A stretch of DNA of 64,000 bases from Squalus acanthias (lineage: Eukaryota): NCBI GenBank assembly GCA_030390025.1, contig CM059430.1:62124001-62188000 (forward strand). Reading direction: 5' to 3'. Position numbers and translations under genes: made by a program. The notes beneath the pieces are model-generated. The model did no database searches, had not been told where the DNA came from, and saw only the letters and a list, made by a program, of their open reading frames with translations. Position 1 is the first letter of the stretch; every line of letters begins with the position of its first letter. Below, one piece after another: positions 35,501 through 55,298 of the stretch.

Positions 35501-36863
35501 GCTCGGTAGGCACCATATTTAATTTTCCATTTGCATTTTGATGCTATTTTGTTTTTACTTTTGTTCAAAATTGTTTGGTTGAACCAGCCTCTGATATTTT
35601 AGTGATGTTGTCCCTTTGAGTAGAACTTAATTTGAGTACCTATGGGGGTTTTGGCTCGTCTGTCCCTGGATTGAAACTCGGCTACTTCAAAATAGGATCC
35701 TAGAATCATTTAGGAAACGTTTCGTTGCTATGGGAACATTGGCCTACCTCCTCCCTCTAGCCTGTGACCGAAAGATCACACGACATGTAGAATTCGCAGC
35801 AAATAATTGCTGTGGCCTAAAGCATTTTAAAAGACACATGTTATAATTTGTTAATGTAAATAAATATTAATTGTAACAAATGTTGAATCGATTTGCATTT
35901 TATTAGACTGCAAGGGACTCCTTATGAATCCCTGTGATCTCAACCATGCAAGCTAAATTTTAGGAGCCATCGCAAGCTGACATTGCAAAATTTCGATGAC
36001 AACCGGTTGATAATATCGCGCGCAGTACATTGTGCACACTTGAAATCCAGAACACATGGCACATGGGGCGAGGTAAATTTTCAGCATGCAGCTCGCGTAA
36101 AACTGACGTTGCGGACTCTGCCCTCGCCATGGAAAGCGCGCGATAGCGGGCTGGTTGTATAATGGGCCAGCGACGAATTCCGCCAGTTTACCGCCACAAC
36201 ACTGAAAGTGAAAATTACCACTTCACCTGCCTCCCCAACCCGCCCCACCCCCCGCCCCACTCCCCACACACACAAAAACACACAAAATGTGTGATGTTCC
36301 AGGTCGTTACTCCTTCGTCTGGCTGCTAAAAATGAAATCAGTGATAGACTGTTTATGGTGTATAATCGAATACACTGGGCCTGCAGTCATTAATAGCCTA
36401 CATCTTCGGACTATTCCGATTCTCAGCTTCTCGCTTTGTTTCTCACGTTTACTTCTACGTACACAGCCCGCTTGTGTTGGTGTTTCGATTTTGATGTTTT
36501 CTTGGAATCAGCAAGCTGCAGAGCGGCGTAAGTCAGCTTGTTGTCTCCGCCTCTTTGTTTAGTCTGTGAAAGTAACATTTAATATCAGCGTTAGTCCATT
36601 GCCCACTCATTGCTTGAAGCACTCGAACTTTAAAAAAGGCTTTGGGGAAATTTCCTCTCATCAATTACCAACTTCAGATTGGAACCGATTTATTCAGATT
36701 TTGTACTGATTTTGTTTTCTCGCCGGTTTCTCCTTGCTCTGCCAACAATGACTCCTGCTGGGCTCCAATTCCAAGAGGGTCTGCTGCCCCCACCACCCCC
36801 CACCCCCAGGGTCCATCCTTCGGCACGAAAAAAATCTTGTTAGTATTCCGGTTTAACGTTCAT

Positions 36864-38077
36864 ATAAGAACATAAGAACATAAGAAATAGGAGCAGTAGT
36901 AGGCCAATCGGCCCCACGAGCCTGCTCCGCCATTCAATAAGATCATGGCTGATCTGATCCTAACCGCCAATCTACTATCTATCACAGAACCATCTCCTGC
37001 ATCTAACAGAATTGCACACACGAAATAGGAGCAGAATCAGGCTACACGGTCCCTGGGCCCGCTCCACTACCCACAGGGCCATGACCGATCCGAACCTAGA
37101 CTCATGTCCAAATTCCTGCCCGCTCCCCGTAACCCTTAATGCCCTTTACTTCTAGGAAACTGTCTATTTCTGTTTTAAATTTATTTAATGATGTAGCTTC
37201 TACAGCTTTTTGTGGCAGCATATTCCATGGACCTACCACCCTCTGAGTGAAGTAGTTCCTCCTCATCTCAGTTTTGAAAGAGCAGCCCCTTCTTCTAAGA
37301 CTATGTCCCCTAGTTCTAGTCTCACCCGTCATCGGGAACATCCTCCCCGCATCCACCCGATCCAATCCCTTCACAATCTTATATGTTTCAATAAGATCGC
37401 CTCTCATTCTTCTGAACTCCAATGAGTAGAGTCCCAATCTACCCAACCTCTCCTCATATGACCACCCCCTCATCCCCGGGATTAACCGAGTGAACCTTTT
37501 TTGCACTGCCTCGAGAGCAAGGATGTCTTTCCTTAAGTAAGGACACCAAAACTGTATGCAGTATTCCAGGTGCGGTCTCACCAATACCTTGTACAACTGA
37601 AGCAATACCTCCCTATTTTTATATTCTATCCCCCTAGCAATGAAAGCCAATATTCCATTTGCCTTCTTAATCACTTGCTGCACCTGCATACTAACGTTTT
37701 GAGTTTCGTGCACCAGGACCCCCAGATCCCTTTGCACTTCAGTACTCTCCAGTATCTTGCCATTAAGATAATAAATTGCTCTAGGATTTATCCTGCCAAA
37801 GTGCATCACCTCACACTTTCCAGTGTTGTATTCCATCTGCCAAATCTCTGCCCACTTACTTAGCCTGTCTATGTCCCCTTGCAGGTTTTTTATGTCCTCC
37901 TCACTCACTACTTTCCCTCCCATCTTTGTATCATCTGCAAATTTAGATATGTTACACTTGGTCCCTTCCTCCAAATCGTTAATATAGATTGTAAAGAGTT
38001 GGGGACCCAGCACTGACCCCTGTGGAACACCACTAGTTACTGATTGCCAGTCTGAGAATGAACCATTTATCCCAACT
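36864..38077 (-). mobile_element. CR1 LINE, 5'-truncated, young (open 303-aa ORF)
   Basis: Uninterrupted ORF 37102-38013 with FADDTK and RPHLEYCIQFW; (ATAAGAAC)n tail. Confidence 0.95.
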
Positions 38078-38596
38078 TCGTGCGACTGCTGTTGTAACCC
38101 ATTTAAATGAGCAGGTTAATACTTCAATTGCAATAGCAGAGAAAGGAATGCCACACCCGTCTGTTAAGTTTATCTCATATCGCAATGTACCGTTTTAAGG
38201 TGTCTGAGCATGGACAGCCTGTGTGACCTGCTGATCCCATGGCGGAGGCTCCACGGTTGAACCTGCCCACGCATCTGCACTTTTCAGCCGCCCCCCACCC
38301 TCTGCCGATCCCTGGGACACGGAGGTCAATTATGATGAATCTTGGCTGAGATCAGCCGACACAGCACACTCGGTAGATTAAACCTGGGATCTTTCTATTT
38401 CCTGCGGCTCAGTGTCGTACCGCAGAACATTGATCGTGTTTCAATGAATGACCTGGCTATACCTTGGCATACACCGTGCTCTCTTCCTTCTGTCTGGCTT
38501 TCGCGTTTTTCGTGGTGTTGGTTACGAGAGCGGCGTGGGTCAGTCTGTCGCCGGTGCCTTGCTTCGTCTATAACAGAGATATTTGCCAGTCTGATC

Positions 38597-38813
38597 AGGT
38601 GAATTTATTCTTTTGCAATTTGTCGTACAGAGCAATCATTATCACAGCCAGACCCGAAAAAGAAACGCGGATAATTTTGACGAAGCGATAGTGTGAAACT
38701 GGTCCACTACCCGTTTTACATCTCTCCCGATTGTATTTCCATTGAAGTCAGTGGGCGAGATGCCGTTTCGCTATCACCATTTTACACTGTCGCACGAAGT
38801 CAAAATTACCCCC
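38597..38813. mobile_element. Short MITE; related copies at ~16613-16790, ~40677-40853 and ~45228-45383
   Basis: GG(G)TGAA(A/T)TT...AATTACCCC-type termini and a shared core (CCCGATT..ATTTCCATTGAAGT). Confidence 0.55.
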
Positions 38814-38920
38814 ACGTTTCTGTACAGATTGTTAACATTGCCTTTGTTATCACAGAGTGTTGATTTTGTATGGAAATGGTTTGGAAATTAATGGCGCCAA
38901 TACCCCACCGCTCTACCTGG

Positions 38921-39408
38921 AGGCATTCTAGAGGGTGCATAGACGATTTACAAGGACGATACCAGAAATGCGAGGGTATATATATCGGAAAGGATGAACA
39001 GGCTGGGTCTCTTTTCTCTTGAAAAAAGAAGGCTGAGGGATGACCTTATAGAGGTTTTTAAAATTACGAAAAGTTTTGATAGAGTGGATACAGAGAGAAT
39101 GTTTCTACTTGTGGGGAATAGCAAACTAGAGGTCATCAATATTAAATAGTCACCAAGAAATCCAATAGGGAATTCAGAAGAAACTTCTTTACCCAAAGAG
39201 TGGTGAGAATGTGGAACTCGCTACCACAGGGAGTGGTTGAAGCGAATAGTATAGATGCATTTAAGGGGGGGCTAGACAAGCATATGAGAGAAAAGGGTAT
39301 AGAGGGTTATGCTGATAGATTTAGATGAGGAAAGGCGGGAGGAGGCTCTGTGGAGCATAAACGTAGGCATGGACTGGTTCTGTGCCGTATATCCGATGTA
39401 ATCCTATG
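38921..39408 (+). mobile_element. CR1 3' fragment inserted in the last exon of the Ig-superfamily gene
   Basis: CR1 ORF2 end with an (ATCCTATGTA)-type tail; flanked by direct repeats TACCTGG at 38914-38920 and 39409-39415. Confidence 0.9.
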
Positions 39409-39517
39409 TACCTGGGAATAGACGGTATGCTCGTTCTCCTGTCTCCGTTTGGGAGGACCTCTGACGTCTCTGAAGTTTAGAGTAGCGTAGGCGGCAATCT
39501 CTTCACTTGGTCCTTGT
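39307..39517 (-). CDS. Exon 6: cytoplasmic tail with ITIM-like AAYATL and ITSM TVYSQV; last 33 aa derived from antisense CR1
   Basis: Acceptor ttgtactggttag|A; reads QGPSEEIAAYATLNFRDVRGPPKRRQENEHTVYSQV; the two Tyr are 23 aa apart. Confidence 0.75.
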
Positions 39518-39924
39518 CTAACCAGTACAAATAAGACATGAAATACTGATAGCGGAGAGTCTGATACAGCTGCCAGCTACCATTAATTGGAACTGAGTCT
39601 GAAAATCTAAATATGCACACAGTAGCCGATAGATTAGGGCACGATTACATTCTGTCCCACTCAATGATTTTATCCAATATTTCACCCATAAGTTGTAGAG
39701 TAATGTTCTAAATATGAAACCCATTGCGCACAAATTATTTACATACATTTAAAATCAGGATGATTCGGAGCACAGCTAATAACTATCCTATGAATACTAC
39801 ATATTACTCATTTCCCCCTTTCGTCCCCAATTAACTCACTCTCTCTACTGCCCTGAAGGTTTTCACTCATGCTGGTGTGTCGCCACATTCCTATTCCTCG
39901 GCCAACACAGCCTATTGGAGGATC

Positions 39925-40330
39925 TTACAACTGGGATTGTTCTCTTTAGAGCATAGCAGGTTAAGGGGAGATTTAATAGAGGTGTTCAAAATTCGGATGG
40001 GTTTTTGATAAAGTAAATAAGGAGAAACTGTTTCCACTGATGGATGGGTTGGTATCCAATGGACACAGATTTACGATAATTGGCAAAAGAACCAGAGGGA
40101 AGATGAGGAGAATTGTTTATGCAGCCAGCTGTTATGATATGGAACGCACTGCCTGGAAGGATGGTGGAAGCAGATTCAGTGGGAACTTACAAAATGGGAT
40201 TGGGATGAAAACAATTGCAGGACTATGGGTAAAGAGCGGGGGGATGGCACTAATTGGATAACTCTTATCAAAGAGCCGGAACAAGCACGGTGGCTTCCTT
40301 CTGTGCTGTAAGAGTTTATGATTCTATGAA
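39925..40330 (+). mobile_element. CR1 3' fragment (intronic)
   Basis: TTAAGGGGAGATTTAATAGAGGTGTTCAAAAT...; GATTCTATG tail. Confidence 0.8.
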
Positions 40331-40423
40331 ATTTAAGTAGTATCTTCTCGGCTGAATGTATATATTGGGTTGCTATTCCCCCCTGCCCCTTCTTCTTTTT
40401 TGGAACATAAAGAACATTGTCAC

Positions 40424-40472
40424 CCTACCGGCTCTTCACTCTGACCCGCTTCCACAGAATTTTTCTTAATAG
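40424..40472 (-). CDS. Exon 5: short cytoplasmic exon (AIKKNSVEAGQSEEPVG)
   Basis: Strong acceptor ttttttcctttcctttag; 49 nt, phase 1 to phase 2 using donor GG|GTGACA, which bridges exons 4 and 6. An alternative donor CCG|GTAGGG is possible. Confidence 0.55.
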
Positions 40473-41195
40473 CTAAAGGAAAGGAAAAAAATCCACCTTG
40501 AATAACTTAATCTGTGTGCCAGCAAAATCAACATGATTTGATGTTGGTCACATTTACTTTGTAAAGTAAGGAGATCTGTAGGGACAGATCAGCTTGAAGG
40601 TGTTTAGAAGTGCCAGTCCTTAGTGTAGTATACTGTTCATGTCCTTCTTATACCCTGTAGTGACGCTGCACCCAATGGAGTAGACTTTGACTTTGTACGA
40701 TAGTGTAAAAGGGGTGATAGTGAGACGGCAGCCAATTTTACATCTCTCCCAGTGACACACACACAGGGAAATAGAAATCGGGAGAGATATAAAACAGTCT
40801 GCCAATTCGCTATCAACCGTTTTACACTATTACAAAAAATCAACATCTACCTCAAAGTGTTTACGCTTCAAGATCTGGACCCGCATTGATACTAAAACTT
40901 TGCAGAACATTAAGGATTGCGGGTGTTTCAAAATGAAAGTGTATAAGTTGAGTGAATAGTTCGAATGGGAAGGTAAAATATTGACATTTCAAGATCCGGT
41001 TTACATTCTCATATTCAAATAGTGTCAACCAAATAACGCTCTTGTGGTAGTAACTTCATTCTTTAAAGATGCAGGCAGTTAAGGGTACTTTATTCCTCTA
41101 CAATCAATCCCTATTCACCTACCCTTTCGGTTTTGTAACAATACAACTGGACCGCAGAAAATAAAAGCATTCGGCGAAATAATAAATGTTCTTAC

Positions 41196-41299
41196 CGTCT
41201 GAAGCCTTCAATCTGACTCTCACCAAAATTATTATCAACAGCAAAATTGTAATGCGCCCCCTGCACATCCAAATATCAGTGCAAATTTGTCATCAGTAC
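41196..41299 (-). CDS. Exon 4: transmembrane exon with a 1-nt frameshift
   Basis: ctgtag|GTDDKFALIFGCAGGAL[shift]TILLLIIILVRVRLKASD|gtaaga. Confidence 0.8.
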
Positions 41300-41967
41300 C
41301 TACAGGATCAACAGATAATTGAAATAAGAAACTGTAGAACATACAGAGATATACACACAGGGAATGATGGGTCCGGCACGGGAGGGCGAGTTCCAAAGGT
41401 GTCCCTCGAGATGATGCCGTCCGCTGACAGTCAGAGGGGCTCGACCCCTTTATTTCTATGGGCAGTAGCTGGACAAGGATTAAAACGTGTACCAAACGAC
41501 ATCAACTGCAAGTCAGTGATGCAATTTATGGAGAGAAAAAATCCCATTACATAAAGGCCCAGGAAGCTTCTCTCTGCACACGAGGGTTGTTAATTAAGAG
41601 TAAAGGGAGATTCATGTTTTACTTAGCCATGCTATACCGGACTGATGGGCACCGGCTGCAAAAAGTGGCAAAGTCACCCGTTCGCCAGTGCTGCCACCCC
41701 TCACCAGCCTTACCAGAGGACACCTACTGCAACTTTTGGTAGGTAACAAGAACGACTTGCATTTATATAGCGCCTTTAAGGCACTTCACAGGAGCGGTAT
41801 TAAACAACATTTGACACCAAGCCACGATTAAGACAGGTGGATGTATGGTCTAAGGAACGTTTTAAAGAAGGAGAGAGATATAGAAGAGCGGTTTAGGGCG
41901 GGAATTCCAAAGTTTAGGGTCTAGACAGCTGAAGGAATGGTGCGCAGAAAACAGATTAACATAATAA

Positions 41968-42395
41968 GAACATCAGAATTAGAAGCAGGAGTAGGGCATA
42001 CGAACCCTCGAGCCTGCTCCGCCATTGAAAAACATCATGGCTGATCTTCGACCTCAACTCCACTATCCCGCCCTATCCCTACATCCATTGATTCCCTTAG
42101 AGTCCAAAAATCTATCTACCTCAGCCTTGAATATACTCAACGACCCAGCCACAGCCCTCTGGGGTAGAGAATTCTAAAGATTCCCAACCCTCAGAATGAA
42201 GAAGTTCCTCATCATCTCAATCCTAAATGGCCGACCCCTTATCTAGGGACTAAGCCCCCTAATTCTAGACTCCCCTGCCTGGGGAAACAGCCTCTCAGCA
42301 TCTAACTTGTCAATCCCCCTCAGAATTTTATATCTTTCAATGCGATCACCTCTCATTCTTCTAAACTCCAGAGAGTATAAGCTCAATCTACTCAA
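41968..42395 (-). mobile_element. CR1 3' fragment (intronic)
   Basis: Reverse-complement CR1 ORF2 end and 3' UTR, similar to 18237-18660. Confidence 0.85.
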
Positions 42396-42760
42396 AAACA
42401 GTTCCATGTATTCAATTTAAATACACAGGATGTAAAAGTAAATCTGGTAGAATGGATCAATTTGGTGCGTAATTTTATTTTATTTGGCAAAAATTTTACG
42501 AGGAATGATCTTTCAACTTTTGAACAGTTCGCACATCAACCTCCCGTTGCGGATTTCTTCAGCGAGATATTCTCCCTCCTTCACTTACAAACCATCTGGA
42601 ATATTTTTATTTAGTTCCCATTGATGTGACACTGAGAGTAAATACATTTCACATGTACCCTATATTCTCGGGGTTGAACAGTTCCCCTGCTACATGTCCA
42701 ATAAGTAATTACAGGTTGGAGCAGATCCCCGCTCCCCGCTGTAAAGGTATCCAATCTTAC

Positions 42761-43057
42761 CTTGACTAACGGTGTAGCTGACATTGGCGGGCAGCAGAAG
42801 AGAGACATGAGATACCAGACATGTATAAACAACTCCGCTCTGGGCAGGCTGTGCTTCTTCCAACGAGCTGGAAACCTTAAACAGTCCCTCTGCATTCCTG
42901 TTTTTCACAGTTGCTATTCCAGTCAGAATTTCGACACCATCTCTTCGCCAGGAGATTTCTAAATGCTCCGGGTAAAAGGCAGTCGTTTTACACTCGAGTT
43001 TTAGAGAAGTCGCTGAAATTCCTTCAACAGGAGCGATTTTCAGGGGAGCTGGGGAAA
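42761..43057 (-). CDS. Exon 3: Ig C1-set domain
   Basis: 297 nt, phase 1/1; LECKTTAFYPEHLEISWRRDG...NAEGLFKVSSSL...YTCLVSHVSL; ttttaaag acceptor and G|GTAAGA donor. Confidence 0.93.
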
Positions 43058-44634
43058 CTTTAAAAGAAAAAATGTTTTTTTTTAATTTAAAGGAACACAT
43101 TCTCATTTGCCTCTCTCGTTATGCGGTTACAGTCCTACTGTCACAACAGTTATCCGCGCTGTCGTTTTTTTTAAACTTCGAGTTTGCATCTATTTTATAA
43201 TTTGTTTTACGGCGCACAGCAAAATGACGGGATGTATTGGAACGTACGCAAAGAGGGTGAATCTCCCAGGGCTGCTAACATGCAGGGAGGCACGCGTCAC
43301 TGTTCTGAATGGAGTATCAGATCCTGGTGCGGGATTGTTCTTGGCAGCAGTGACCCCGAGTGAGGTTCCTGTCCGACTATATCGGAGAGAGCGCAACCCA
43401 GTCTGCACGAACAGTGAAATCGCTTCTCGTTATTGATTGATAATCTTTGGAGCATTAAACATTTTGTGTGTTTATTTAAAAATTGGTCGCTTTTTAGATA
43501 TTTCATATATTGCAAACATATTTTATATAAACGGTGAATATTGAGAAGAAGAATTCTTACCAATATATTGAAATATATCTGATGTCTACACAGATTGCAG
43601 ACAGGATGCTGTTATATCGATAGATTAATATTCGTGCATTACAGTTGCTAACTCAGCATTTCAGTGTCTGTGGTGGAGATTTCAGGTCGTGCAGCTTTCA
43701 TGAAATGAACTTTCCCCAGACCGCGAACCGAGGGCTGGAATTTTTTTCACGTCATGAAAGGGCTATATTGGTAATGATGTATCTCTGTGTAGATCACAAC
43801 ATCCATACAGATGAGGGAATACGAATAGGAACTCCTAACTCAGAGTGCATGTCTTATATAATTCCAGGTTTTTTGTCCTTCCCCACGTCTATTCGGTCTG
43901 TTGAACAACTTTTGCCTGAAAAGATTCTGCTTATATCAGTCCTACAGTCGTCTTTTACTAATGTGAACCTTTGTCCGCTAGAGCTACAGTCACTGTTTAG
44001 CTGAAAGTAGAGTCCCTTATTCGGTTTGCATTGTTGTGTCAGTTTATTACAAACAATCTCTGGAAAATCTTTTCTTTAAATGTTTACTTTTCCGATTTTG
44101 TAGTAATAGCAAACATTTAAATCAGTGGTATTATTAACTTGGAAAGTTTTTTTTAGCGTTTATTCCCAGCAGCACCGTATTGACTGCACCACCAAAGCTC
44201 AGAATTCCTCCGTTCTTTACCACTGATCTGTTTAGGTATAATATGTAATGCAGCAGGATTTCCGTGGAGGAGGAGGACGAAAGTTTTCACTTAATCTGCT
44301 GCCGTAACTTCAGACTGGGATTGGTAGAATGGAAATGGAAATCATGAATTGCAAAGACGGGCGCCCAGGCGTTTATAGCAATTTCGGCGATAATTTGCCC
44401 GTACTTTACAGGTTGTGAGTGTATGAAAGAAAGTCCAATTAGCGTAAGACAGATGTTCAAAAAGGAGCATTGGGTTTCTATACTCTCCTGCAAGGTCTGG
44501 GACTTGGGGTGGAATCCAGCATTGAGGGTAAGACCAACACTTGCCTTTCAATGGGTTATAAGATTCCATTGTGAAATGAGTTTGGCAGTCTCAAAAAAGT
44601 TCTCAATGAAAGCAAGTGCAGAGCCTAAACTGCG

Positions 44635-44855
44635 GATACAGGAACAGGAGGAGGCCATTTAGCCCCTCGAGTCTGCTCCGCCATTCAATTAGATGATGGC
44701 TAATCTGTACCTCAAATCCATTTGTCCACTTAACTCCATATCCTTTGATACCCCCACCTAACAAAAATCTATCCACCTCAATCTTGGAAGCTCCAATTGT
44801 CCCATCATCCACAGCCATTTCGGAGAGAGAATTCCAGATTTTGGCCAATTCTGTA
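44635..44855 (-). mobile_element. CR1 3' end fragment (intronic)
   Basis: KIWNSLSE...IDRFLLGGGIKGYG-like sequence plus 3' UTR. Confidence 0.8.
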
Positions 44856-45450
44856 CAGAAAGTATTAGATTTGCAATTTCAAGTAGTGGGACCAAAATGT
44901 TCCCTGGTGTGTGCAATAACCATGATTGTAGCAGGACATTTTTCTGTTGCGTTTGTGATGAAGGCACCTTGTTGGGGCGGCGTAGCCGGCCTTTAATGAA
45001 GTATAAAATACATGACCTCGGAGGTGTTAAAATTGTTCGCATTGTCGCTCCTTGGCAACGCTATTTTGGTGAGAAGGAATTTGGCCATCTAATCCCAGTT
45101 ATTAATTTGAAGCCAAGATTTAAACGTTTATACCATTTCAGTATCTTGCCTCCTTAATAATTGTAACTGCACTTCCAAAAGAACTCATTGGATGCAAAGC
45201 ACTTTGGAATGTCATGCGGACAATGAAGGGGTGAAATTGATCTGGGGCAGTAGCGCAAACCGGGCGCTAGCGAATCGGCCAGCCGTTGTACACCGGGGTG
45301 AATGGAAAAGAAAATCGGGAGAAGTGTAAAATCAATTTGCTATCACCTGGTTTTCGTCAAGTGATAAAATTCAAATTACCCCCACTATTGAGTTTTACGT
45401 ATATCGCACACTGCTGAGAATCTCCCACTCACCGGCACAATGACACTTAC

Positions 45451-45756
45451 CGTACACAGTAAGCTGGGAGCCACTTCCATCTCCAATAGATTTTTGTTGA
45501 TATTTTACTTTGCAGTAATACACTCCGGCGTCGGCGACACTCGCATTCACGAGATCAAATGAATCACTTCCCTTTTTTACATTAAATTGCTTTCTGCTAT
45601 CTGGCTCGAGAAACGTCTCATCGCCCCGTCTCCGCCAATAAACATCGGGGGCATCTTGAAACATGGGAAATGTGCAAAACATGGAAACATTTGTACTCCT
45701 GGCAACCTTAATATATTTCGGGAATTGAAACACTTTGATCGAAGGTACTTCAGCGG
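45451..45756 (-). CDS. Exon 2: Ig V-type domain with germline-fused J-like strand
   Basis: 306 nt, phase 1/1; MFC, VYW, DAGVYYC, GSGSQLTVY; ttttctgatag acceptor and G|GTAAGT donor. Confidence 0.93.
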
Positions 45757-46019
45757 CTATCAGAAAATAAACAAAAATGCTGACATAATAGTTTGCATAC
45801 TTTAGGAAAGGAACAAATATAATTCCTTAGAAATTTTTTAAAAATCAAGAAAATTAACCACATTAATAACACTATAAGAAAAACGGAAGAAATGTGCACA
45901 AAATATGACAAATTGTTTTAACATTAGCTTTTTTTCGATAAACATGGAGCGGTGAGATAAACAAACACACCTCTGTAAAGAACTCCCACCAAAGATATGC
46001 AGAAAAGCGCGGAGCTCAC

Positions 46020-46053
46020 CGCCATTCTGAGTGACGAGCATTAGACTAGCCAT
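46020..46053 (-). CDS. Exon 1: putative leader (MASLMLVTQNG)
   Basis: ATG at 46053; the phase-1 donor G|GTGAGC joins the V exon in frame. Short for a signal peptide. Confidence 0.55.
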
Positions 46054-46087
46054 AAGCTGCAAGGAACCAACAAGCTCCTGGAGCTTT

Positions 46088-46193
46088 GGAAGCCAGGGCT
46101 TTTCACGTGATCTGGAGTGGCGTGTAATATCACGTGCCTAAATGTACAATTTCAATTGATGTATTACCATTGTTAAGACAGAATTGTGGGCGG
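46088..46193 (-). promoter_or_regulatory. Candidate proximal promoter of the receptor gene
   Basis: CACGTG E-boxes at 46104-46109 and 46131-46136 and a GC box at 46188-46193, just upstream of the ATG. Motif match only. Confidence 0.3.
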
Positions 46194-47211
46194 AGAGTCG
46201 TGCAGACTCAGGGTTTAATGCATCCAATTAAAAGATCGAGGATACTTAGGCGTATTGTAGTTACTCCTGTGACTCACTTAAGCAAAAATGCGCCATCTTG
46301 AAAGCCATGTAACTTTTTTGCCTCCTGATTGCACTTCTCTCTTGGCGGAACCGCGAAGACAAATCCGGAGTGTAAGTGCTCCTTTCTTGTTCTTGTGGTG
46401 ATAAAGCGTTATTGATTTAACTGCTGTATATTCTTCCGCCTATCCCTACAGCAAGCCCTGATCAGTGTAAAAAAAATCTCCTGTCTGTGCATTGAATGCC
46501 CATGCGCCTTTACGCTAACCAGTCGAGTTCTCCATGTTAATGAGCTTAAATGCGTTTGTCAAAATCCAACGACTCACATTCTGCTATAAATAGGAGGAGC
46601 CTATTTGTCTGATCCACGCTTGACTTCAGCTGTGCTGGTGAACTGTCGGATGAACTGACTGGCCTACCGCGTCCCTATTAACCTTCTGGTCTTATTTCCG
46701 ATGATCGTTGAAACTAACAAATCAGAAAACAAGAGTGAAAGTGGAACGCCAGGACGTTTGGACTGTAGTTATTTTGTGCGTTATCGTGAATCCCCTCATC
46801 CTGTTGCCCGATCATAGCTCCCAGATCCACCTGAATTCACAAATGCTGTCCTAGTGGCTTCTATTAAATGATTGCAGTGTCTACCATCGCATATGAGTAT
46901 CCATTAGCACCATCCTCCGATCAAATACTCTGGTGTGAGTTTCGTTTACATATGTACGTTCAGTGAACTTTCATGCTGCCACTAAATCCATTCACTAGAT
47001 ATCTATTTTGTTTTAGATTGCATGCTTGCTTACCATGACCTGGTCGCTTATTTGGTGAAGCCATCGTAAATGGAGCCTTTTGTATTAGGTGACCTCAGAG
47101 ACAACTATTTCGGTAGTGGCATGTTTGTGCTAAGTTGCCCGGCACTGGACAGAATATTAATCAAATAGTCTTGGGTTGTCATCCATATCTGTAGCACTGA
47201 CATGACCGTCA

Positions 47212-48576: not shown

Positions 48577-48958
48577 AAGAAGTCTTACTGCAATTATATA
48601 GGGGGAAAAATTAGGTCGCGCCCCGTTTGGGGCGCAAATATCGTCTGGACGCAAAAATTAGCACCTGGCGCTAATTATCGCCACTGACTGGAAACTTCAC
48701 TTTTACCGGCCCGGGAGGTGAGTGGAGCACTAAATCAGGCCCTGCACACCTGTCTTAAGGCGCAAAGGCCGAGCAGTGAGGTGCTAACTCAGCGCGCGAG
48801 CGCAGCGCAGGTGCTGCCAGTTAGCGAGGGAACACAGACACACTGACGCCGGCCAGTTCTTAAAGCGGGGGGGCCAACTTGCTCCCCAGCCACACCCTGC
48901 TCATTGCAGCCTTGAATCTCGACCTGGAGAGACCTGTGAATCCATTTTGCTGCCAAGG

Positions 48959-50778
48959 ATGGAGAGGGTGAGAGAACGAGCTCAGCGCTTCACCGAGCGG
49001 GCCTTGGATGCTCTGGTTGGCGTGGTGGAGCGCAGAAGATCTATACTCTTCCCTGAGAGTGGCAGGAGGCCTTTGCCACGCGAGTACAGAAGAGTGTGGA
49101 GGGAGGTGGCTCAGAGCGTCTCCTCCAGGGGCATGGTGCCCAGGACCCATGTTCAATGCCGCAAAAAGTTCAACGACCTCACTCGGGTCGTCAGGGTGAG
49201 TGGCTTTTTCTCAATACCTCTCCATCCCTCCATCTCAACCTCACTCTATGGCCAGAGGGTCTTAAAACCCCAATGCACAACACTCATCCAACACCTATGG
49301 CCCATTCATTAAACACACACAGACATTCCACACTTTGCATACAGTAAGGGTTATTCACCTATGGGAGGCATATCAGGCAAGACCATGGCTGCATACAGTA
49401 AGGGCTATTCACCTATGGGAGGCACATCAGGCAAGACCATGGCTGTATATTTACTCAGATGCTGTCCTTTTACTTGCAGGCCAACATGGCGCATAATAGG
49501 AGACAACAGCAACGGACAGGTGGAGGGCGGCCTCAGCTGCAACGCCTCAGCGATCTTGAGGAGCGCGTCCACAGGATTGTGGCAAGCCGGGTGATCGGTC
49601 CCGTCGCCACTGGAGACGCCGACCCCGTTCTGGACAGCAATGGTAAGGTCATCACCTTTTTGTCCTCTGTCCTTCCACTTGTCCCTCACAACACCAGCCT
49701 TTGACACTTTCAATCCAACTTGCTAACTCGCTGCACTTATTCCTCCCTTACTGCCACCCTGTCCTCACGCTAAAGCCACTCTTGTACCTCCCTGCTTTCA
49801 GATGGTGATTCACCAGCTGAGGAGACGGGCCCTGAAGCTGCCAGTGGGAGTGAAGCTGCAGCCGAGGAGGAAGAGGAAGCCGGAGCATCAGTGCCACCCT
49901 CTCCCGAGGAAGCCCATGCCCACACTGGGAACACGCCTTCCCTGGAGGGGAGCAGGGGGGAAGGGTCTGATGAGGGTGAAGCTCCAGGACCCAGCGGGCT
50001 GCAGCAACGCCATGGGGGTAGGGAAGAACGGGGGCCTTCTCCCCAGAGGGAGAGTATGCCAGCGACTCCTACTGCAATGGACGCAGAGGAGGAGCGGCTG
50101 ATCGCAGAAATGAACACCCAGGCGGTGGGCATGCACACTGAGCTCATGGGTGCAGTGGGAAGGGTGCCCGAATGCATTGAGTCACTGGCAAGGAGTGTGG
50201 AGCACTTCGCTGTAGCACAGGCGGATGCCACACTAAAGCTTAGTGCTGCAATTCAGTCACTGACTGCCGTGATCCCATCTCTGACTGCTCTCATGCAGAC
50301 TCAGATTGAGGCCACGCAAGCACTGACTGCTGCCAACCTCGATGGTTCGTTCACATGTCCCCGGGGCTCTCACCGTGCCGCAGCAGGCCAGCAATCTGTG
50401 CTCCAGCAGATTGCTCCGGATGCTGAAGTGCTGCCCCTTGGGAGTGCCAGTGTGTCGGTCGAGCAGGGAGTTACTGTCCTCTCTCACAATGACAGCATTC
50501 CTGCTGCCAACACTGTCACTTCTCCACTGCACTTGCCACCGCCTGTAGGACAGACTGCTGCCGCCCATGCAGAGTTGGTGCAGTCTGCAGCCGGGCCCTC
50601 CAGGCCCAGAACTGTTCGAGGCCGTCCTTCAGGGGCATCTGCAGTGTCAGGGTCTGACAATCAGCAGCCTTCCACCAGCCTTGCTGCAGCCACTGAGGTC
50701 CCATTACGGAGGAGCAGTAGGGTTAGAAGGGGGGAAGTGCGCAAGGGAAGGATATCACCCTCGAACGGCAAAAAGTAG
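48959..50778 (+). CDS. Harbinger Myb/SANT-like DNA-binding protein, 3 exons (48959-49195, 49480-49642, 49802-50778), 458 aa, intact
   Basis: RERAQRFTERALDALV...WREVAQSVSS...PRTHVQCRKKFNDL and RTGGG motifs; GT-AG introns; the spliced 1377 nt are open to TAG. Confidence 0.85.
49337..49444. repeat. 54-bp tandem duplication in Myb intron 1
   Basis: GCATACAGTAAGGG(T/C)TATTCACCTATGGGAGGCA(T/C)ATCAGGCAAGACCATGGCT x2. Confidence 0.9.
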
Positions 50779-51089
50779 GAGGTGTGACAAAATGCCGGTC
50801 ATTTTTTTATTAAAGGCCGAGGTTCGTGGTCCAACTTTTGTCTAGTGTTTTGGACATTATCTCCAGGTTGTGACAACCAGTTATGTTAATGACTGTTTTT
50901 TGTGTTTATTTCTATGAGTTTTTCATGAGGAAATGACACACACAGAGTTAGTAAAATAAATAAGTTTTTGTATTCAAAATATACATGTTTGGTGTTTGGA
51001 ATCATTGGTGCCTTGGCCAGCTTAGGGGTTGCGTGCTGGGTTCATTGATGTTGTTAGCAATGGCAGAAGCCATTTCCACAGCAGGGGCC

Positions 51090-52249
51090 CTAGAAGCGGC
51101 TTGCTATCAGCCGTTGACGGACGGCCCTTGCAGTTTCACAATAGTGGGCCGCCCTCCCGCCTGGTGCTGCTGAATATCATCCTCCTCGTCCTCTTCCTCC
51201 TCTTCCTCCTCCTCCTCTGGTGGTGCTCCAAGGCCTGGTGGCATTGGCTGGGTCCTGACGATTGCCATGTTATGCAACATGCAGCACACAATTACGAAGT
51301 TGGATACTCGCTCATGCGAGTACTGCAGGGCTCCTCCAGAATGGTCGAGACAGCGGAACCGTTGCTTCAGCACGCCGATTGTGCGCTCAATGATGTTCCT
51401 GGTAGCTTGATGGCTCTCGTTGTACCGCAGCTCAGCAGGGATGTTGGGCGTACGGAGCGGTGTCATCAGCCAGGTGCTCAATGGATACCCCTTGTCCCCG
51501 AGAAGCCAACCAACTGGCTGATGCGGTGCCTCGAAAAGTTCTGCCACAGTAGTCTGGCGCAGGATGAAAGCATCGTGGCAGCTGCCAGGATAGTGGGCAT
51601 TGACAGCGAGTATCAGCTGTCTGTGGTCACAGACCAACTGAACATTCTAGGAATGGGACCCCTTTCTGTTCCGGAAATCCTCGGCATTCTCATGTGGAGC
51701 ACGCAAAGCCACATGCGTGCAGTCAATGGCGCCCTGCACCATGGGGAAGCCCGCTATCCTCGCAAAGCCCAGAGCACGGTCACGCTGCTTGTATGGGGTC
51801 ATGGGGAAAGAGATGAACTCTCGTCTCCTTTTAAAGAGGGCATTTGTGACCTGCCGGATGCAGCAATGCACCGCGAACTGGGAGATATTGGCGAGGTCCC
51901 CAGCAGCAGCTTGAAATGAGCCAGTAGCATAGAAATTGAGAGCCACTGTGACCTTCACTGCCACCGACAGAGACGTCCTGGACCTCAGTTGAGGCTGCAG
52001 ATCTGGCTGCAGCAGGTGGCAGAGCTCAGTGACCACCTCCTTGCTGAATCGCAGCCTTCGCAAACACAGCTCCTCAGACAAATGAATGTAGGAGAGCTGT
52101 TCACGATATACCCTGGGAGGGTAAGCTCTCCTCTACAGACGCCTGTTGGCCCTCCTCCGTCTGGCCATCATTGCCACTCTCTCTCTGCGTCTCTGTGTCC
52201 TCCGATTCAGCTGGAGCAGGACGACGCCCCAATTCAGTGCAGCCCCCAT
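51090..52249 (-). pseudogene. Harbinger DDE transposase (HARBI1-like) with 2 nonsense codons and a likely C-terminal frameshift
   Basis: [48 protein letters not shown]; in-frame TAG at 52133-52135 and 51647-51649. Confidence 0.92.
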
Positions 52250-52928
52250 AGTCTCTTTGCAAGCAAAGTAATGAAGGACAGCAACCAAAGCACCAGCGAA
52301 GTTAGGATCAGTAGGCAAAACTACCTCACAAAGCGTTGACTTAATGCAGAAGTCTCTCTTTCTCTCTCTCCGAATCTCTCTCTCTCTCTCTCAGAACGTG
52401 TGGGGCAAAAATGTCAACCACAGAAAAAGACAGGAAGAGGCCCCCTTTAAATAGCGCCCCCCCCCCCAGCCCCACAGCGATTGATAGCGTTCCAGTCTTC
52501 CGGCCGTTGGATGCGCCAGGCGGTAAGGCAGGGGGCGCCACTCAATTTCCGCTCCGGGGCGCCACAAGGGCGTTGCGCCATGGAATGACGTCACAATCTG
52601 CGCGCGCAGGTGGTCGCAGCGGTAAAGTTTAGCGCCGCCGCACAATGTCTAGTTAAGTTCCCGAGCGGCGCAAACATCGCTGCGCCCGGGCGCTAGCTGC
52701 TTTGCGCCCCATTAGCGCCCTCTTAAGGCGCTAACGGGAGGCGCAACCAACTGAATTTTTCCCCCTATAAAGGCCACACCTGAAGTACTGTGTTCAGTTT
52801 TGTTGTCCTTTCCTAAGGAAGGATATAATTGCCTTACGGGGAGCGCAATGAAAGTTCACCAGACTAATTCCTGGGATGGGGGTTTGTCTTATGATGAGAG
52901 ATTGAGGAGACTAGGCCTAAAATAACAA

Positions 52929-55298
52929 GGGGTAGAAATTCATTATAGCCCAGGAATGGGCACAAACTTCTGAAAACTTTGAGATTGAGCGCCAAGAACT
53001 AATGCAACTCGCTGCATGCTAACTTAAGTGTTAGCGCTCGAAGAAAGGACTAGAATGCTACCTCAAGCGTTAATGACCTGGCTCTGTGGCATTAGACTCA
53101 ATGTGCTAAGCAATTGCATGTGCAGTCAAATCGCTAGTCATCATTGCCACAGGCTCTTTCCAGTTCAATCATGCTGCAAAACTTCATTCTCAGCATTGCT
53201 GGTTCTGCAGCTTTCTCAGCAAGCAGCAGAAGGAGAAGGAGAAGGAACTGGACCGCTGAAGGAGGTGTCATTATGGCAGATTAACGGTCTAGAGAGAGAG
53301 CTCGGAGATTCTTAGACCAAGGATTGGAGGCCTTGATCCTCGCTGTGGAAAGACAGAGGGTGGTGCTATACCAGTCAAGTGTCAGGATGCCCTCGCCGCA
53401 AGTATTCAGTGCCATGTGGAGGGAGATAACCCAGCAGGTCTTGGGCAGCACTGTGGTCCCCAGGACCCAAACACAGTGCAGGAAGAAATTTAACGACCTC
53501 ACTCGGGTCGTCAGGGTGAGTCAATGCTTCAACAAATGCTACATCCCACCATCTGAACCTCAGTCTGCACAAACTGCCCAAAGCACTGCACACCCAGCAC
53601 TCACACACCAACCGTCTGCAACTCCCAACACTCACACCTGCATCTCACAGCTTGGACACAATGACAGCTACTCAACTATGGCAGGCACATCTCCCAAACA
53701 CATTGCTCCACACTACTCACACACTTTCCTTTCTCATGCAGGCCAAGGTGGCTCACAACAGGATAGAGCAGGAGTGCACAGGCGGGAGGCAACCTGACAC
53801 CCAACCACTTCTGAGCTGGTGGAAAGAGTGCTCAAATCATCGGGCGCCAGGTGGTGGACGTCGTGGCCACCGGCGATGTTGACCCCCTTGGGGACATCAA
53901 CGGTATGTTTATCCCTACTCCTGCTTGTCACATCTCACTTCACACTCACCCCACAAGCCTTTCCCACTTTCCAAGCTAATCATGCTGTATGCATGCCTTT
54001 CTCCCTTCCTGATCACTCCCCTCACCTTAAACCGACTCTTGGGGTTGCGGAGGGGTGTCATGAGCCAGGTGGAGATCAGTTAGTCCTGTCTCCGACCATC
54101 CATCCATGAGCTTGATATGATGGCTGGAAGAGTGCAGGTACACCAGTCCTGCAAAGGATGAAGGCATTGTGGCTGCTGCCAGGATAGCGGGCATTCACAT
54201 TGAGGATTCGCTGCCTGTGGTCGCACACCAACTGCACATTAATTAATTGTTTTCCTTTGCGGTAATGGAAGAGCTCAGGATTGTTATGCGGTGCCCACAA
54301 AGCCACATGGATGCAGTAAATGGTGCTATCCCGGCAAAGCCACATGCACGTTCATCCGGCTTCTCTCTGGTGATGGGGAAGGAAATGTAGTCCCTTTTCG
54401 GACTGTAGAGAGCCTCTGTGACCTCCCGAATGCAAGGATGGATTTTTGCGATACCTTCTGTTACAGACTGGAATGAACCGCTGGTGAACAAATTGAGGGT
54501 TACGGTGACGTTGGCTGCCACTAAATAAGCCGTGGTCGACCTGATCTGAGGCTCGAGGTCTGGTTGCAGGAGGTAGCAGAGTTTGGTGAGCACATCCTGA
54601 AGTGAGGCCTTCTAATGCACGGCTCCTCACTTAATTGGAGGTAGGAGAAGGGCTCTCTAGAATACCCTCCGAGGGTAAGACCTCTTGTTGAGAGCCCTGA
54701 TGGCCCACCTCCTCCCTCTGGCCACATCTTGCAATCTTTCTCGCTGCCTCTACTCCCTCCCCAGTAGATCCTGGAGGACGAGATCGACTACCAGTACAGC
54801 CCCCATTAATGTAACGATGTGTTGCACTTTGAAATTTTGTCACAATAAATTTAACAAATTTTTACTTGACACATTACTCCTGATACTAAAGTACCTTTAA
54901 ATGACTGAATTAAACTCTTGCACAATTGCAAACTGACAAGGAAGCAGTGAAACAGTACTAACCTGACAGCTGTGACTCATCAATTTAAATAACGACACCG
55001 GAGTCGCCAACAGCCTAACACGCCTCCTCTTCCTGTCATTGTTGGGGCGAGGAGCTAAGGCATGGGGTGATAATCAATTTGGCAGATAGGGTGCTCAGTG
55101 AGCGTTGCACGCTCATTAGCATCATGATCTGCATGGCGCTAAAGCCCCAGGTGCTAACTGTTAGCAGCGGCGCTAAGGGGCGACTGGATTTGGTGTGCGG
55201 TGCTGGATCCACCTCACCCCGGCGCTACTTCATTAGCCTCCAGTTAGCGCCCGTGACAGGTGCAAACGGGAGAGGCTGAACAACTAAATTTCTCCCCC
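52929..55298. mobile_element. Second Harbinger, internally deleted and decayed
   Basis: TIR GGGGTAGAAATT / AATTTCTCCCCC with flanks CAA/CTA; Myb exons 1-2 (PRTQTQCRKKFNDL, 53273-53902) and transposase N-terminal two-thirds ([17 protein letters not shown], ~54040-54800 minus); the 3' ends of both genes are deleted. Confidence 0.88.

What the first reader, a model, noticed from the sequence alone, without database searches (positions are those of the whole stretch)
39307..46053. Germline-joined VJ-C1 receptor with an inhibitory tail: antigen-receptor-like ectodomain without rearrangement
Seen: one exon encodes a V domain together with a J-like G strand (YYC-KVKYQQKSIGDGSGSQLTVY), with no RSS between V and J. 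It is followed by a classic C1-set exon, a TM exon and a tail with AAYATL and TVYSQV tyrosines 23 aa apart. Known: C1-set domains are largely limited to Ig, TCR, MHC, tapasin and SIRP-type proteins, and single-exon VJ occurs in NKp30, SIRP, NITR and PRARP. VJ-C1 is the proposed architecture of the pre-RAG antigen-receptor ancestor. Inference: this is a member of a poorly described chondrichthyan VJ-C1 inhibitory (SHP-1/2 recruiting) receptor family, possibly with activating paralogues. The ORF track shows the exons only as fragments and misses exons 5-6.
Basis: partly seen in the sequence, partly recalled or inferred. Interest (0 to 1): 0.85.

Follow-up and report, generated by a model that had tools for sequence, protein, structure and literature searches.

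The report
Shark SIRP-like VJ-C1 receptor gene
This is one copy of a large cartilaginous-fish family of non-rearranging, antibody-like surface receptors with a SIRP-alpha-style inhibitory tail, but this copy has a one-base loss in its membrane-anchor exon and may be dead.

Summary
On the minus strand a leader exon, a V-set exon that carries its own J-like G strand, and a C1-set exon follow one another, with phase-1 AG/GT introns and no RSS consensus. Two things were missed.

First, the gene does not end at 39307. By homology to shark proteins it runs on through two more tail exons to a stop at 36423. This gives eight exons and three tyrosine-pair units.

Second, the transmembrane exon is 104 nt where 105 are needed. 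All three of its frames hold stop codons. As assembled, this copy cannot make an anchored receptor with its tail.

The gene belongs to a multigene family seen in 19 named chondrichthyan species. NCBI's pipeline mostly labels its members [quoted passage not shown], that is, SIRP-alpha-like. The family includes short-tailed members with a charged transmembrane segment.

The tail unit (YxxL, then a second Tyr 23 residues on) mirrors the SIRP-alpha motif pair. I could not show orthology to SIRP. There is only one C1 domain, synteny could not be tested, and sequence ranking was inconclusive.

Earlier notes of this scan report the same family at many other places in this genome. My verdict is a real but ordinary new member of an annotated, unpublished family, and probably a pseudogene or null allele.

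The parts
45971..46025 (-). Exon 1: start codon and signal peptide (MAVSSALFCISLVGVLYR, plus 1 nt). Donor gtgtgt, phase 1.
   Evidence: Family members begin with a similar hydrophobic leader.
45451..45756 (-). Exon 2: V-set domain with a germline-joined J-like G strand (...YYCKVKYQQKSIGDGSGSQLTVY). 306 nt, phase 1 to 1.
   Evidence: Pfam V-set E 8.1e-9. AF2 model with mean pLDDT 92.7, in which residues 98-102 form the last strand. Foldseek finds V domains. No RSS consensus. 75% identical to Heterodontus P0151.
42761..43057 (-). Exon 3: C1-set domain. 297 nt, phase 1 to 1.
   Evidence: Pfam C1-set E 2.5e-10. It has FYP, 13 residues between Cys and Trp, and C-L-V-S-H (against the criteria quoted). 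AF2 model pLDDT 90.0. Foldseek's top hits are MHC class II beta2 domains, TM 0.86-0.88.
41196..41299 (-). Exon 4: stalk, transmembrane segment and basic anchor. It is broken: 104 nt where phase 1 to 1 needs 105. Frame A reads TDDKFALIFGCAGGALQFCC and then a stop at 41237-41235. Frame B reads ITILLLIIILVRVRLKASD. The frame switch lies near 41250.
   Evidence: all three frames hold stops. tblastn of P0008 and P0162 splits into two frames here.
40424..40472 (-). Exon 5: short cytoplasmic exon (IKKNSVEAGQSEEPV). Phase 1 to 2.
   Evidence: tblastn of P0008, 71% over 14 residues but E 0.54 on its own. AG/GT sites and phases fit.
39412..39517 (-). Exon 6: first tyrosine-pair unit (QGPSEEIAAYATLNFRDVRGPPKRRQENEHTVYSQ). 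Phase 2 to 0, donor gtacat.
   Evidence: (67.5% to P0008, E 1.3e-12). Tyr-Tyr spacing 23.
39000..39389 (+). LINE-tail repeat in intron 6.
   Evidence: Self-blastn repeat cover. Second copy at 25047-24906. The plus-strand ORF 39200-39328 resembles the C-terminal ends of the LINE ORFs.
38463..38567 (-). Exon 7: second unit, degenerate (TKQGTGDRLTHAAL...ESTVYAK). His stands where family members have Tyr. 105 nt, phase 0 to 0.
   Evidence: (E 0.004-0.026). The matching unit of Heterodontus P0151 is also degenerate.
36423..36563 (-). Exon 8: third unit and stop codon (TKQRGGDNKLTYAALQLADSKKTSKSKHQHKRAVYVEVNVRNKARS*).
   Evidence: tblastn of P0008, 75% over 48 residues, E 1.8e-14.. Tyr-Tyr spacing 23.
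37102..38013 (-). LINE reverse-transcriptase ORF fragment inside intron 7. It is not part of the gene product.
   Evidence: ORF list. It resembles the other LINE ORFs of the window listed.

Best explanation
The locus is an eight-exon gene on the minus strand, 46025-36423. Its exons are leader, VJ-type V-set domain, one C1-set domain, stalk/TM, a short cytoplasmic exon, and three exon-sized tyrosine-pair units.

It belongs to a large, fast-duplicating chondrichthyan family of non-rearranging V-C1 receptors. Automatic annotation mostly names these SIRP-alpha-like. Within that family it falls in a subfamily shared by sharks and rays.

Intact long-tailed members most likely work as inhibitory receptors. 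This mechanism is inferred, not shown. The V domain would bind a ligand. Src-type kinases would phosphorylate the paired tyrosines (YxxL, then a second Tyr 23 residues later). Each doubly phosphorylated unit would dock the tandem SH2 domains of SHP-1 or SHP-2, as the SIRP-alpha motif pair does. Short-tailed paralogues with an Arg and an Asp/Glu-His in the TM segment would be the activating partners.

The copy in this window has lost one base in the TM exon. As assembled, translation stops inside the TM segment and the tail is not made. It is most likely a young pseudogene or a null allele, because its other seven exons are still open.
For: Anatomy:
- Every exon has AG/GT splice sites, and the phases fit everywhere except across the TM exon.

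Domains:
- Pfam gives V-set and C1-set.
- The AF2 models are confident, pLDDT 92.7 and 90.0.
- Foldseek places the V exon with CD79b, VNAR, TCR and Ig V domains, and the C1 exon with MHC II beta2 domains.
- The C1 sequence hallmarks quoted from Hatherley 2009 are all present.

Family:
- The V-exon search of 1.84 billion representatives gives 295 hits at E<=1e-3. Many are 250-420 aa V-C1-TM-tail proteins.
- Named members come from 19 chondrichthyan species.
- 31 of 31 hits and 42 of 44 hits are chondrichthyan family members.
- The closest proteins are 70-78% identical in the V and C1 exons.
- In quick trees the window's exons sit inside starred clades of 17 rows (V, SH-aLRT 96) and 18 rows (C1, 98). 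These clades also hold Heterodontus, Heptranchias, Scyliorhinus and batoid members.

Tail:
- P0008 aligns to exons 6, 7 and 8.
- Among the fetched proteins, the Tyr-pair spacing of 23 occurs in 48 distinct segments, against 11 at 22 and 1 at 24.
- The human SIRP-alpha peptide printed in PMC5589908 (passage) has its two tyrosines 24 apart.

Defect:
- The TM exon is 104 nt and has stops in all three frames.
- Homologues align to it in two frames.
- DNA contigs of two samples of the same species label, and of a relative, cover the bins that hold the exon. None of the 12 indel rows shown lies there.
Against: - No RNA evidence exists. The one small RNA(?) run that I laid had zero depth on every exon bin and covered only repeats. 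Splicing of all eight exons is therefore inferred from homology and splice signals.
- The read test of the frameshift is weak. The runs are short Logan contigs laid at 88% likeness, which may come from paralogues, and 42 indel rows were hidden.
- Exon 5 matches only weakly on its own (E 0.54).
- The SHP-docking mechanism is borrowed from SIRP-alpha, and nothing here tests it.
- In this copy only LTYAAL is a canonical ITIM. AAYATL and AVYVEV have Ala at position -2, and one unit has His in place of Tyr.
Confidence: 0.7

Rival explanations
1. The gene is intact and functional. On this reading the missing base in the TM exon is an assembly or consensus error, or a rare allele of the sequenced animal, and the locus encodes a working inhibitory receptor.
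For: - Seven of eight exons are open, with all canonical Ig residues and splice sites.
- The break is a single base next to short homopolymer runs.
- The read test could not settle it, because 42 indel rows were hidden and contigs may be paralogous.
Against: - No insertion at the TM exon appears among the best-supported indel rows in any of three DNA runs whose contigs lie in those bins.
- Large, fast-duplicating receptor families usually carry many pseudogenes. This is general knowledge and was not tested here.
- The tail motifs of this copy are already partly degenerate.
Confidence: 0.3
2. The family is not SIRP kin. On this reading it is a separate chondrichthyan V-C1 lineage, derived from the Ig/TCR/UrIg-like stock, whose tyrosine-pair tail resembles SIRP-alpha by convergence or exon shuffling.
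For: - There is only one C1 domain, against two in SIRPs (SIRP architecture).
- The family profile scores an Ig lambda-bearing chain (1.8e-37) and UrIg2 (2.2e-35) above SIRP-alpha (5e-28, rank 6) in the PDB.
- The V exon alone hits SIRP-alpha V only at E 0.02-0.04, and SIRP-alpha V ranks 43rd by fold.
- The tail-only search found 4 of 42 candidates, all chondrichthyan.
- NCBI's names for members are inconsistent: SIRP-alpha-like, NCR3LG1-like, tapasin-related, Ig lambda-like and TCR beta-like.
Against: - Multi-domain Ig chains gain score by summing several domains.
- SIRP-alpha aligns across V plus C1 in one stretch and outscores single Ig light chains, 101 against about 86 bits.
- The tail shares the motif types, their order and the 23/24 spacing with the SIRP-alpha peptide and motifs printed in PMC5589908 and PMC5413580.
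- An amphibian protein named SIRP-alpha-like is among the few non-chondrichthyan V hits.
Confidence: 0.35
3. On this reading exon 6 is the last exon, read through into the LINE-derived sequence to the stop at 39307, giving a two-tyrosine tail.
For: - The donor after TVYSQ (gtacat) is weak.
- The read-through frame stays open for 34 more codons.
Against: - The two downstream exons are conserved at 75% (E 1.8e-14) and about 40-45% with family tails, and have matching phases and splice sites.
- The read-through part lies in a dispersed repeat.
- No family member ends this way.
Confidence: 0.1

Closest known systems
SIRP-alpha (PTPNS1/SHPS-1/CD172a) and the paired SIRP family of tetrapods
   Same: - An N-terminal V-set domain with a J-like end, followed by C1-set domain(s), a single TM and a tail (architecture).
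- The tail carries tyrosine pairs of the ITYADL...TEYASI / LTYADL type (motifs as printed in PMC5413580 and PMC5589908). The spacing is 24, against 23 here.
- The family has long-tailed inhibitory-type and short-tailed charged-TM members, like SIRP-alpha and SIRP-beta.
- V-only forms exist in the family (P0021, P0049, P0091, P0093), as D1-only SIRP variants do.
- NCBI names many members SIRP-alpha-like.
   Different: - One C1 domain instead of two.
- The number of tyrosine-pair units varies from one to three or more, one exon each.
- The V domain is short (103 residues) and closer in fold to CD79b and VNAR than to SIRP-alpha V.
- No sequence search here linked the tail to tetrapod SIRPs.
- Synteny and CD47 binding are untested.
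UrIg / UrIg2 (non-rearranging shark VJ-C1 genes; Flajnik et al., Sci Adv 2025, PMC12227049, abstract and passages read)
   Same: - A germline-joined VJ exon followed by C1-type domains in elasmobranchs.
- UrIg2 is the best PDB hit of the C1 exon (3.7e-18, summed over three domains) and second for the family profile.
   Different: - Nurse shark UrIg2 has nine C1-type domains and forms disulfide-linked dimers (abstract). This gene has one C1.
- The best single-domain match is modest (i-Evalue 7e-6).
- That paper's main text contains neither 'SIRP' nor 'ITIM'.
PRARP genes (Fu et al., J Immunol 2019; cited in PMC10751288, not held, so features are recalled)
   Same: Non-rearranging VJ-type IgSF receptor genes proposed as relics of the antigen-receptor precursor (passage).
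   Different: I could not compare them. No PRARP sequence or paper was available, and one search returned only unrelated uses of the acronym. Earlier notes of this scan describe convergent gene pairs inside IgL clusters elsewhere in this genome. That is a different setting from this tandem cluster.
Ig light chains, TCR chains and the MHC class II beta2 domain
   Same: - V-C1 order.
- The C1 exon superposes on MHC II beta2 domains at TM 0.86-0.88, rmsd 1.4-1.7 and 29-34% identity.
- Ig lambda-type chains score highest with the family profile.
   Different: - No RSS and no split between V and J.
- It has its own TM and a tyrosine-motif tail, not a partner-dependent antigen receptor chain.

Membership tests
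IgSF C1-set domain | Pfam C1-set above the gathering score | tested here: met
   41 bits against a cut-off of 21, E 2.5e-10.
IgSF C1-set domain | (F/Y)(F/Y/H)P at the BC loop, 13 residues between the strand-B Cys and the strand-C Trp, and xVxH after the strand-F Cys (criteria quoted from Hatherley 2009) | tested here: met
   C-KTTAFYPEHLEIS-W has 13 residues between Cys and Trp and contains FYP. YTC-LVSH follows the strand-F Cys.
IgSF C1-set domain | C1 fold | tested here: met
   AF2 pLDDT 90.0. The top 50 Foldseek rows shown are MHC class II beta-chain entries or complexes holding them, TM 0.78-0.88.
Germline-joined (non-rearranging) VJ domain | V-set domain and a J-like GxG(T/S)xLxV G strand in one exon | tested here: met
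   Pfam V-set. GSGSQLTV lies 4 codons before the donor. The model's last strand is residues 98-102. The canonical J motif itself is recalled, not taken from a call.
Germline-joined (non-rearranging) VJ domain | No recombination signal sequence | tested here: met
   0 exact matches to the consensus heptamer or nonamer on either strand in 36000-46500. Only exact consensus was searched.
Chondrichthyan 'PTPNS1-like' V-C1 receptor family (NCBI models) | V and C1 exons nest among named members | tested here: met
   70-78% identity to Heptranchias and Heterodontus members. Starred clades of 17 and 18 rows.
Chondrichthyan 'PTPNS1-like' V-C1 receptor family (NCBI models) | Same order of TM exon, short exon and tyrosine-pair tail exons | tested here: met
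   P0008 aligns collinearly to six places of the window. Splice sites and phases fit.
Chondrichthyan 'PTPNS1-like' V-C1 receptor family (NCBI models) | Open reading frame through all exons (a functional member) | tested here: not met
   The TM exon is 104 nt with stops in all three frames.
SIRP family (SIRP-alpha type) | V-set plus two C1-set domains | tested here: not met
   The 64-kb window holds only one C1 exon. Most aligned family models also have a single C1; P0113 is an exception.
SIRP family (SIRP-alpha type) | Cytoplasmic tyrosine pairs of ITIM type, about 24 residues apart | tested here: inconclusive
   The family meets it: spacing 23 in 48 segments, with motifs such as LTYAAL and TEYAEI. 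In this copy, two units have a Tyr pair at spacing 23 and one is degenerate, only one motif is a canonical ITIM, and the tail lies behind a frameshift.
SIRP family (SIRP-alpha type) | Sequence closer to SIRPs than to other V-C1 proteins | tested here: inconclusive
   SIRP-alpha ranks 6th for the family profile, behind Ig chains and UrIg2. The V exon hits it at E 0.02-0.04. The tail search found no tetrapod protein.
SIRP family (SIRP-alpha type) | Synteny with the SIRPA region | not testable with these tools
SIRP family (SIRP-alpha type) | Binds CD47 | not testable with these tools
   This needs an experiment.
UrIg / UrIg2 | VJ followed by an array of C1-type domains (nine in nurse shark UrIg2) | tested here: not met
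   One C1 exon, against the description in PMC12227049.
Rearranging Ig/TCR genes | V and J segments separated and flanked by RSS | tested here: not met
   V and the J-like part are contiguous in one exon, with no RSS consensus.
PRARP | Features as defined by Fu et al. 2019 (recalled only) | not tested

The most novel reading that the evidence does not exclude
The chondrichthyan V-C1 family is the true counterpart of the tetrapod SIRP family. That would mean a non-rearranging VJ-C1 receptor with exon-sized, SHP-docking tyrosine-pair units and paired inhibitory/activating forms already existed in the last common ancestor of jawed vertebrates. The single-C1 form would be ancestral, and V-C1-C1 would have arisen by C1 exon duplication, as the skate model P0113 shows can happen. 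This would give a living, experimentally tractable model of the V-C1 'myeloid receptor' stage that Hatherley et al. proposed as close to the antigen-receptor precursor.
Probability: 0.35. Interest if true: 0.6.

Novelty: new member of a known kind. Interest (0 to 1): 0.38.

Why it matters
Non-rearranging VJ-C1 receptors are the closest living models of what the RAG transposon invaded. Cartilaginous fish are the oldest lineage with Ig, TCR and MHC.

A large SIRP-like V-C1 family with paired inhibitory and activating forms exists across sharks, rays and chimaeras. That would place SIRP-type signalling, and the V-C1 receptor layout outside Ig/TCR, at the base of jawed vertebrates. It also offers many natural variants for binding and signalling studies.

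For this particular locus the value is smaller. It adds one, probably defective, copy. It also shows that exon models of this family need homology guidance, because tail exons are separated by LINE insertions and are easily missed.

In the library I could search, the family is known only from automatic gene models. A proper description with phylogeny, synteny, expression and ligand would still be new work.

Tried and rejected
- A second V or C1 exon, or a paralogue, in the window: none.
- An alternative 'activating' TM exon like those of P0167, P0175, P0010 and P0042: no hit better than E 0.12.
- A single-frame reading of the TM exon or another acceptor: all three frames hold stops. The only other AG, before GGGGCG, gives the wrong phase (read).
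- RNA evidence: the best holders were DNA. The RNA(?) run X13 covered only repeats.
- A link from the tail to tetrapod SIRPs by sequence: the tail-only search gave 4 of 42 candidates, all chondrichthyan. The Atlas search scored 0.82 with an unnamed cluster, below the level that means anything, and its structure rows had TM below 0.3.
- The family profile search of 5.8 billion proteins reached no bony-vertebrate relative. Its 2 non-family hits, at E 1e-4 and 9e-4, are PTK7a and an insect NCAM2-like protein. The tool needs shared 5-mers, so this is no evidence of absence.
- Literature on shark SIRP-like genes: searches found nothing relevant. The search for 'PRARP' returned only unrelated acronyms. 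The J Immunol 2023 UrIg paper is not held, and Fu et al. 2019 was not available. The supplements of the UrIg papers, which may hold trees with other V-C1 genes, were closed and not seen.
- The joined (spliced) protein was never built or searched. All searches used single exons or natural database proteins.

Full report
**What is in the sequence**

The feature lies on the minus strand. The start codon is at 46025. It opens a 55-nt leader exon that ends at a GT donor in phase 1.

The next exon, 45756-45451, is 306 nt and runs phase 1 to 1. It encodes a complete V-set domain (Pfam V-set, E 8.1e-9, above the curated cut-off). The domain ends in ...YYCKVKYQQKSIGDGSGSQLTVY, directly before the donor gtaagt. 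The J-like GxG(S)xLxV stretch is therefore part of the V exon. No exact RSS heptamer or nonamer consensus occurs anywhere between 36000 and 46500.

The third exon, 43057-42761, is 297 nt and also runs phase 1 to 1. It is a C1-set domain (Pfam C1-set, E 2.5e-10). It shows every sequence hallmark that Hatherley et al. 2009 list for C1-set domains (passages read):
- FYP at the BC loop;
- exactly 13 residues between the strand-B Cys and the strand-C Trp;
- LVSH after the strand-F Cys.

AlphaFold models were built on family alignments and are confident, with mean pLDDT 92.7 for the V exon and 90.0 for the C1 exon. By Foldseek the V model is nearest to CD79b, shark VNAR, and TCR and Ig V domains; SIRP-alpha V ranks 43rd. 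The C1 model is nearest to MHC class II beta2 domains, at TM 0.86-0.88.

The V exon alone was searched against 1.84 billion representative proteins. It found 295 hits at E<=1e-3. Among the best 150 listed were many proteins of 250-420 aa with the layout V-C1-TM-tail.

I laid the closest long-tailed protein back on the window. This was P0008/P0151 from Heterodontus francisci, at 78% identity in V and 74% in C1. The last of these is 75% identical over 48 residues (E 1.8e-14) and ends in a stop codon. All have AG/GT sites and mutually consistent phases.

It runs into a dispersed LINE-tail repeat covering 39000-39389, with another copy at 25047-24906. A LINE reverse-transcriptase fragment also sits in the next intron.

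The gene therefore has eight exons and spans 46025-36423. Its tail consists of three exon-sized units:
- AAYATL...TVYSQ, with the tyrosines 23 residues apart;
- LTHAAL...TVYAK, with His where relatives have Tyr;
- LTYAAL...AVYVEV, again 23 apart.

**The broken exon**

The TM exon, 41299-41196, is 104 nt. Entry from the C1 exon and exit to exon 5 both need phase 1, which requires 105 nt. Each of the three frames of the exon holds stop codons. Homologues align to it in two frames:
- GTDDKFALIFGCAGGAL in one frame;
- ITILLLIIILVRVRLKASD in the other.

The Heterodontus protein reads GTDNTFLLIFGCAGGILAILLLIIILTRLKLKASDG in a single frame. One base is thus missing near 41250. As assembled, translation stops at 41237-41235, inside the TM segment, and none of the tail is made.

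I laid contigs of four public runs on 40300-46100. DNA contigs of two samples with the window's species label, and of a related organism, lie in the bins that hold the exon. None of the 12 indel rows shown falls there. However, 42 rows were hidden, the contigs are short, and at 88% likeness some surely come from paralogues. I take this as weak support that the deficit is real. The one small run guessed to be RNA had zero depth on every exon bin and covered only repeats, so it says nothing about expression.

**What family it is**

Names given by the sources place the relatives in 19 chondrichthyan species. These cover sharks, rays, a skate and the chimaera Callorhinchus. The label is most often [quoted passage not shown], that is, SIRP-alpha-like. 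Others are labelled NCR3LG1-like, tapasin-related, Ig lambda-like, TCR beta chain-like, SIRP-beta-1-like or uncharacterized.

All 31 hits of a full-length search and 42 of 44 hits of a profile search are chondrichthyan family members.

Quick maximum-likelihood trees were made separately for the V columns (63 rows) and the C1 columns (60 rows). They put the window's exons in starred clades of 17 and 18 rows, with Heterodontus, Heptranchias, Scyliorhinus and batoid members. Several other subfamilies, including Callorhinchus-only groups, lie outside.

The family contains three kinds of member:
- long-tailed members;
- short-tailed members whose TM segment carries an Arg near its start and Asp/Glu-His near its end (P0010, P0030, P0042, P0046, P0166, P0167);
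- V-only forms without the C1 exon.

Earlier notes of this scan report the same kind of gene at many other places on this chromosome, from 247 kb before the window to 13 Mb beyond it. These notes are unchecked. They agree with the multi-copy picture that I see in other species and in the several distinct contigs laid on the C1 exon.

**How it most likely works**

Across the fetched proteins the tail is built from units in which a YxxL motif is followed by a second tyrosine. The Tyr-to-Tyr distance is 23 residues in 48 distinct segments, 22 in 11 and 24 in 1. The family consensus reads ...YxxLNLxxSKK...EERTVYAQTKQ...TYAxLxL...YA...; individual members end the last unit in EYAE(I/V/L) or VYAEV.

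Human SIRP-alpha carries ITYADL and TEYASI in one peptide, with the tyrosines 24 apart. That peptide is used as a bisphosphoryl motif that activates SHP-2 (passage of PMC5589908). SIRP-alpha also has a second motif, LTYADL (passage of PMC5413580). Phosphorylated SIRP-alpha ITIMs recruit SHP-1 and SHP-2 (review PMC12975943, passages).

I therefore infer that intact long-tailed members are inhibitory receptors. Each phosphorylated unit would dock the tandem SH2 domains of SHP-1/2. The charged-TM members would pair with an ITAM adaptor, as SIRP-beta does with DAP12. These steps are inferred and nothing here tests them.

**Is it a SIRP?**

Features shared with SIRPs:
- a V domain with a J-like end;
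- a C1-set domain;
- the tail motif types, their order and their spacing;
- paired receptor forms;
- V-only variants.

Features not shared or not shown:
- SIRPs have two C1 domains, whereas this gene and most aligned family models have one.
- The family profile scores an Ig lambda-bearing chain and UrIg2 above SIRP-alpha in the PDB (1.8e-37 and 2.2e-35 against 5e-28). Those chains do sum several domains, and SIRP-alpha outscores single light chains.
- The V exon alone matches SIRP-alpha V only at E 0.02-0.04.
- A tail-only search reached no tetrapod protein.

I therefore file the gene as a member of the chondrichthyan "SIRP-alpha-like" V-C1 family. It works like SIRP-alpha, and orthology to SIRP stays open at about one in three.

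It is not UrIg2, which has nine C1-type domains in nurse shark. It is not a rearranging receptor gene. PRARP could not be compared.

**Novelty and verdict**

Four literature searches found no description of this family. The held library lacks most subscription journals, and supplements were closed. Gene models with SIRP-like names have been public for years, for example the Callorhinchus entries.

The locus is a new member of a known kind and probably a defective one. The family as a whole deserves a proper study, but this window adds little beyond a corrected gene model.

All searches used single exons or natural database proteins.

Noticed in passing
window 46283-46474 (minus strand): A stretch about 260-450 nt upstream of the start codon matches the N-terminal extension of the Heptranchias perlo model P0175 at 55% over 64 residues (E 7.5e-16), with an in-frame stop in the window. 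It is either a conserved 5' region or upstream exon of this subfamily, or a mis-annotated coding start in that model.
   Followed up: partly
window 41658-42433 and 44568-44955: Two intronic repeats have very high summed contig depth in all four runs, including the RNA(?) run. That run's summed depth in these bins ranged from about 360 to 78,000. They are likely abundant SINE/LINE-tail elements, possibly transcribed. Many 'goes back' joints occur at 44636-44677.
   Followed up: no
protein P0113 (Amblyraja radiata, XP_032892405.1): This skate family member has V-C1-C1 with two nearly identical C1 copies. It is either a recent C1 exon duplication or an assembly duplication. It shows how a SIRP-like V-C1-C1 layout could arise.
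   Followed up: no
proteins P0010, P0030, P0042, P0046, P0166, P0167, P0175: Short-tailed family members share a TM segment that begins with Arg (R-[FLS]-[IFL]-L...) and ends in Asp/Glu-His. This looks like an adaptor-binding, activating-type anchor. No such exon exists in this window.
   Followed up: partly
proteins P0021, P0049, P0076, P0091, P0093, P0100: These family models go from the V domain straight to the TM and tail, without the C1 exon. They suggest C1-skipping splice forms or V-only genes.
   Followed up: no
window 48900-54600: A GC-rich block (0.52-0.56) holds ORFs on both strands at 51107-52081 and 54243-54593 that look to me like a PIF/Harbinger-type DDE transposase, together with Myb/MADF-like ORFs at 48947-49312 and 53324-53797. 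This is judged by eye and was not tested.
   Followed up: no
proteins P0097 (Heteronotia binoei) and P0140 (Varanus): Among the few non-chondrichthyan single-pass hits of the V exon are reptile receptors with two V-like domains and a VTYA(D/H)L...VVYAEV tail, spacing 18 measured in P0097. They are named obscurin-like and CEACAM1-like, and may be another unnamed ITIM receptor family.
   Followed up: no
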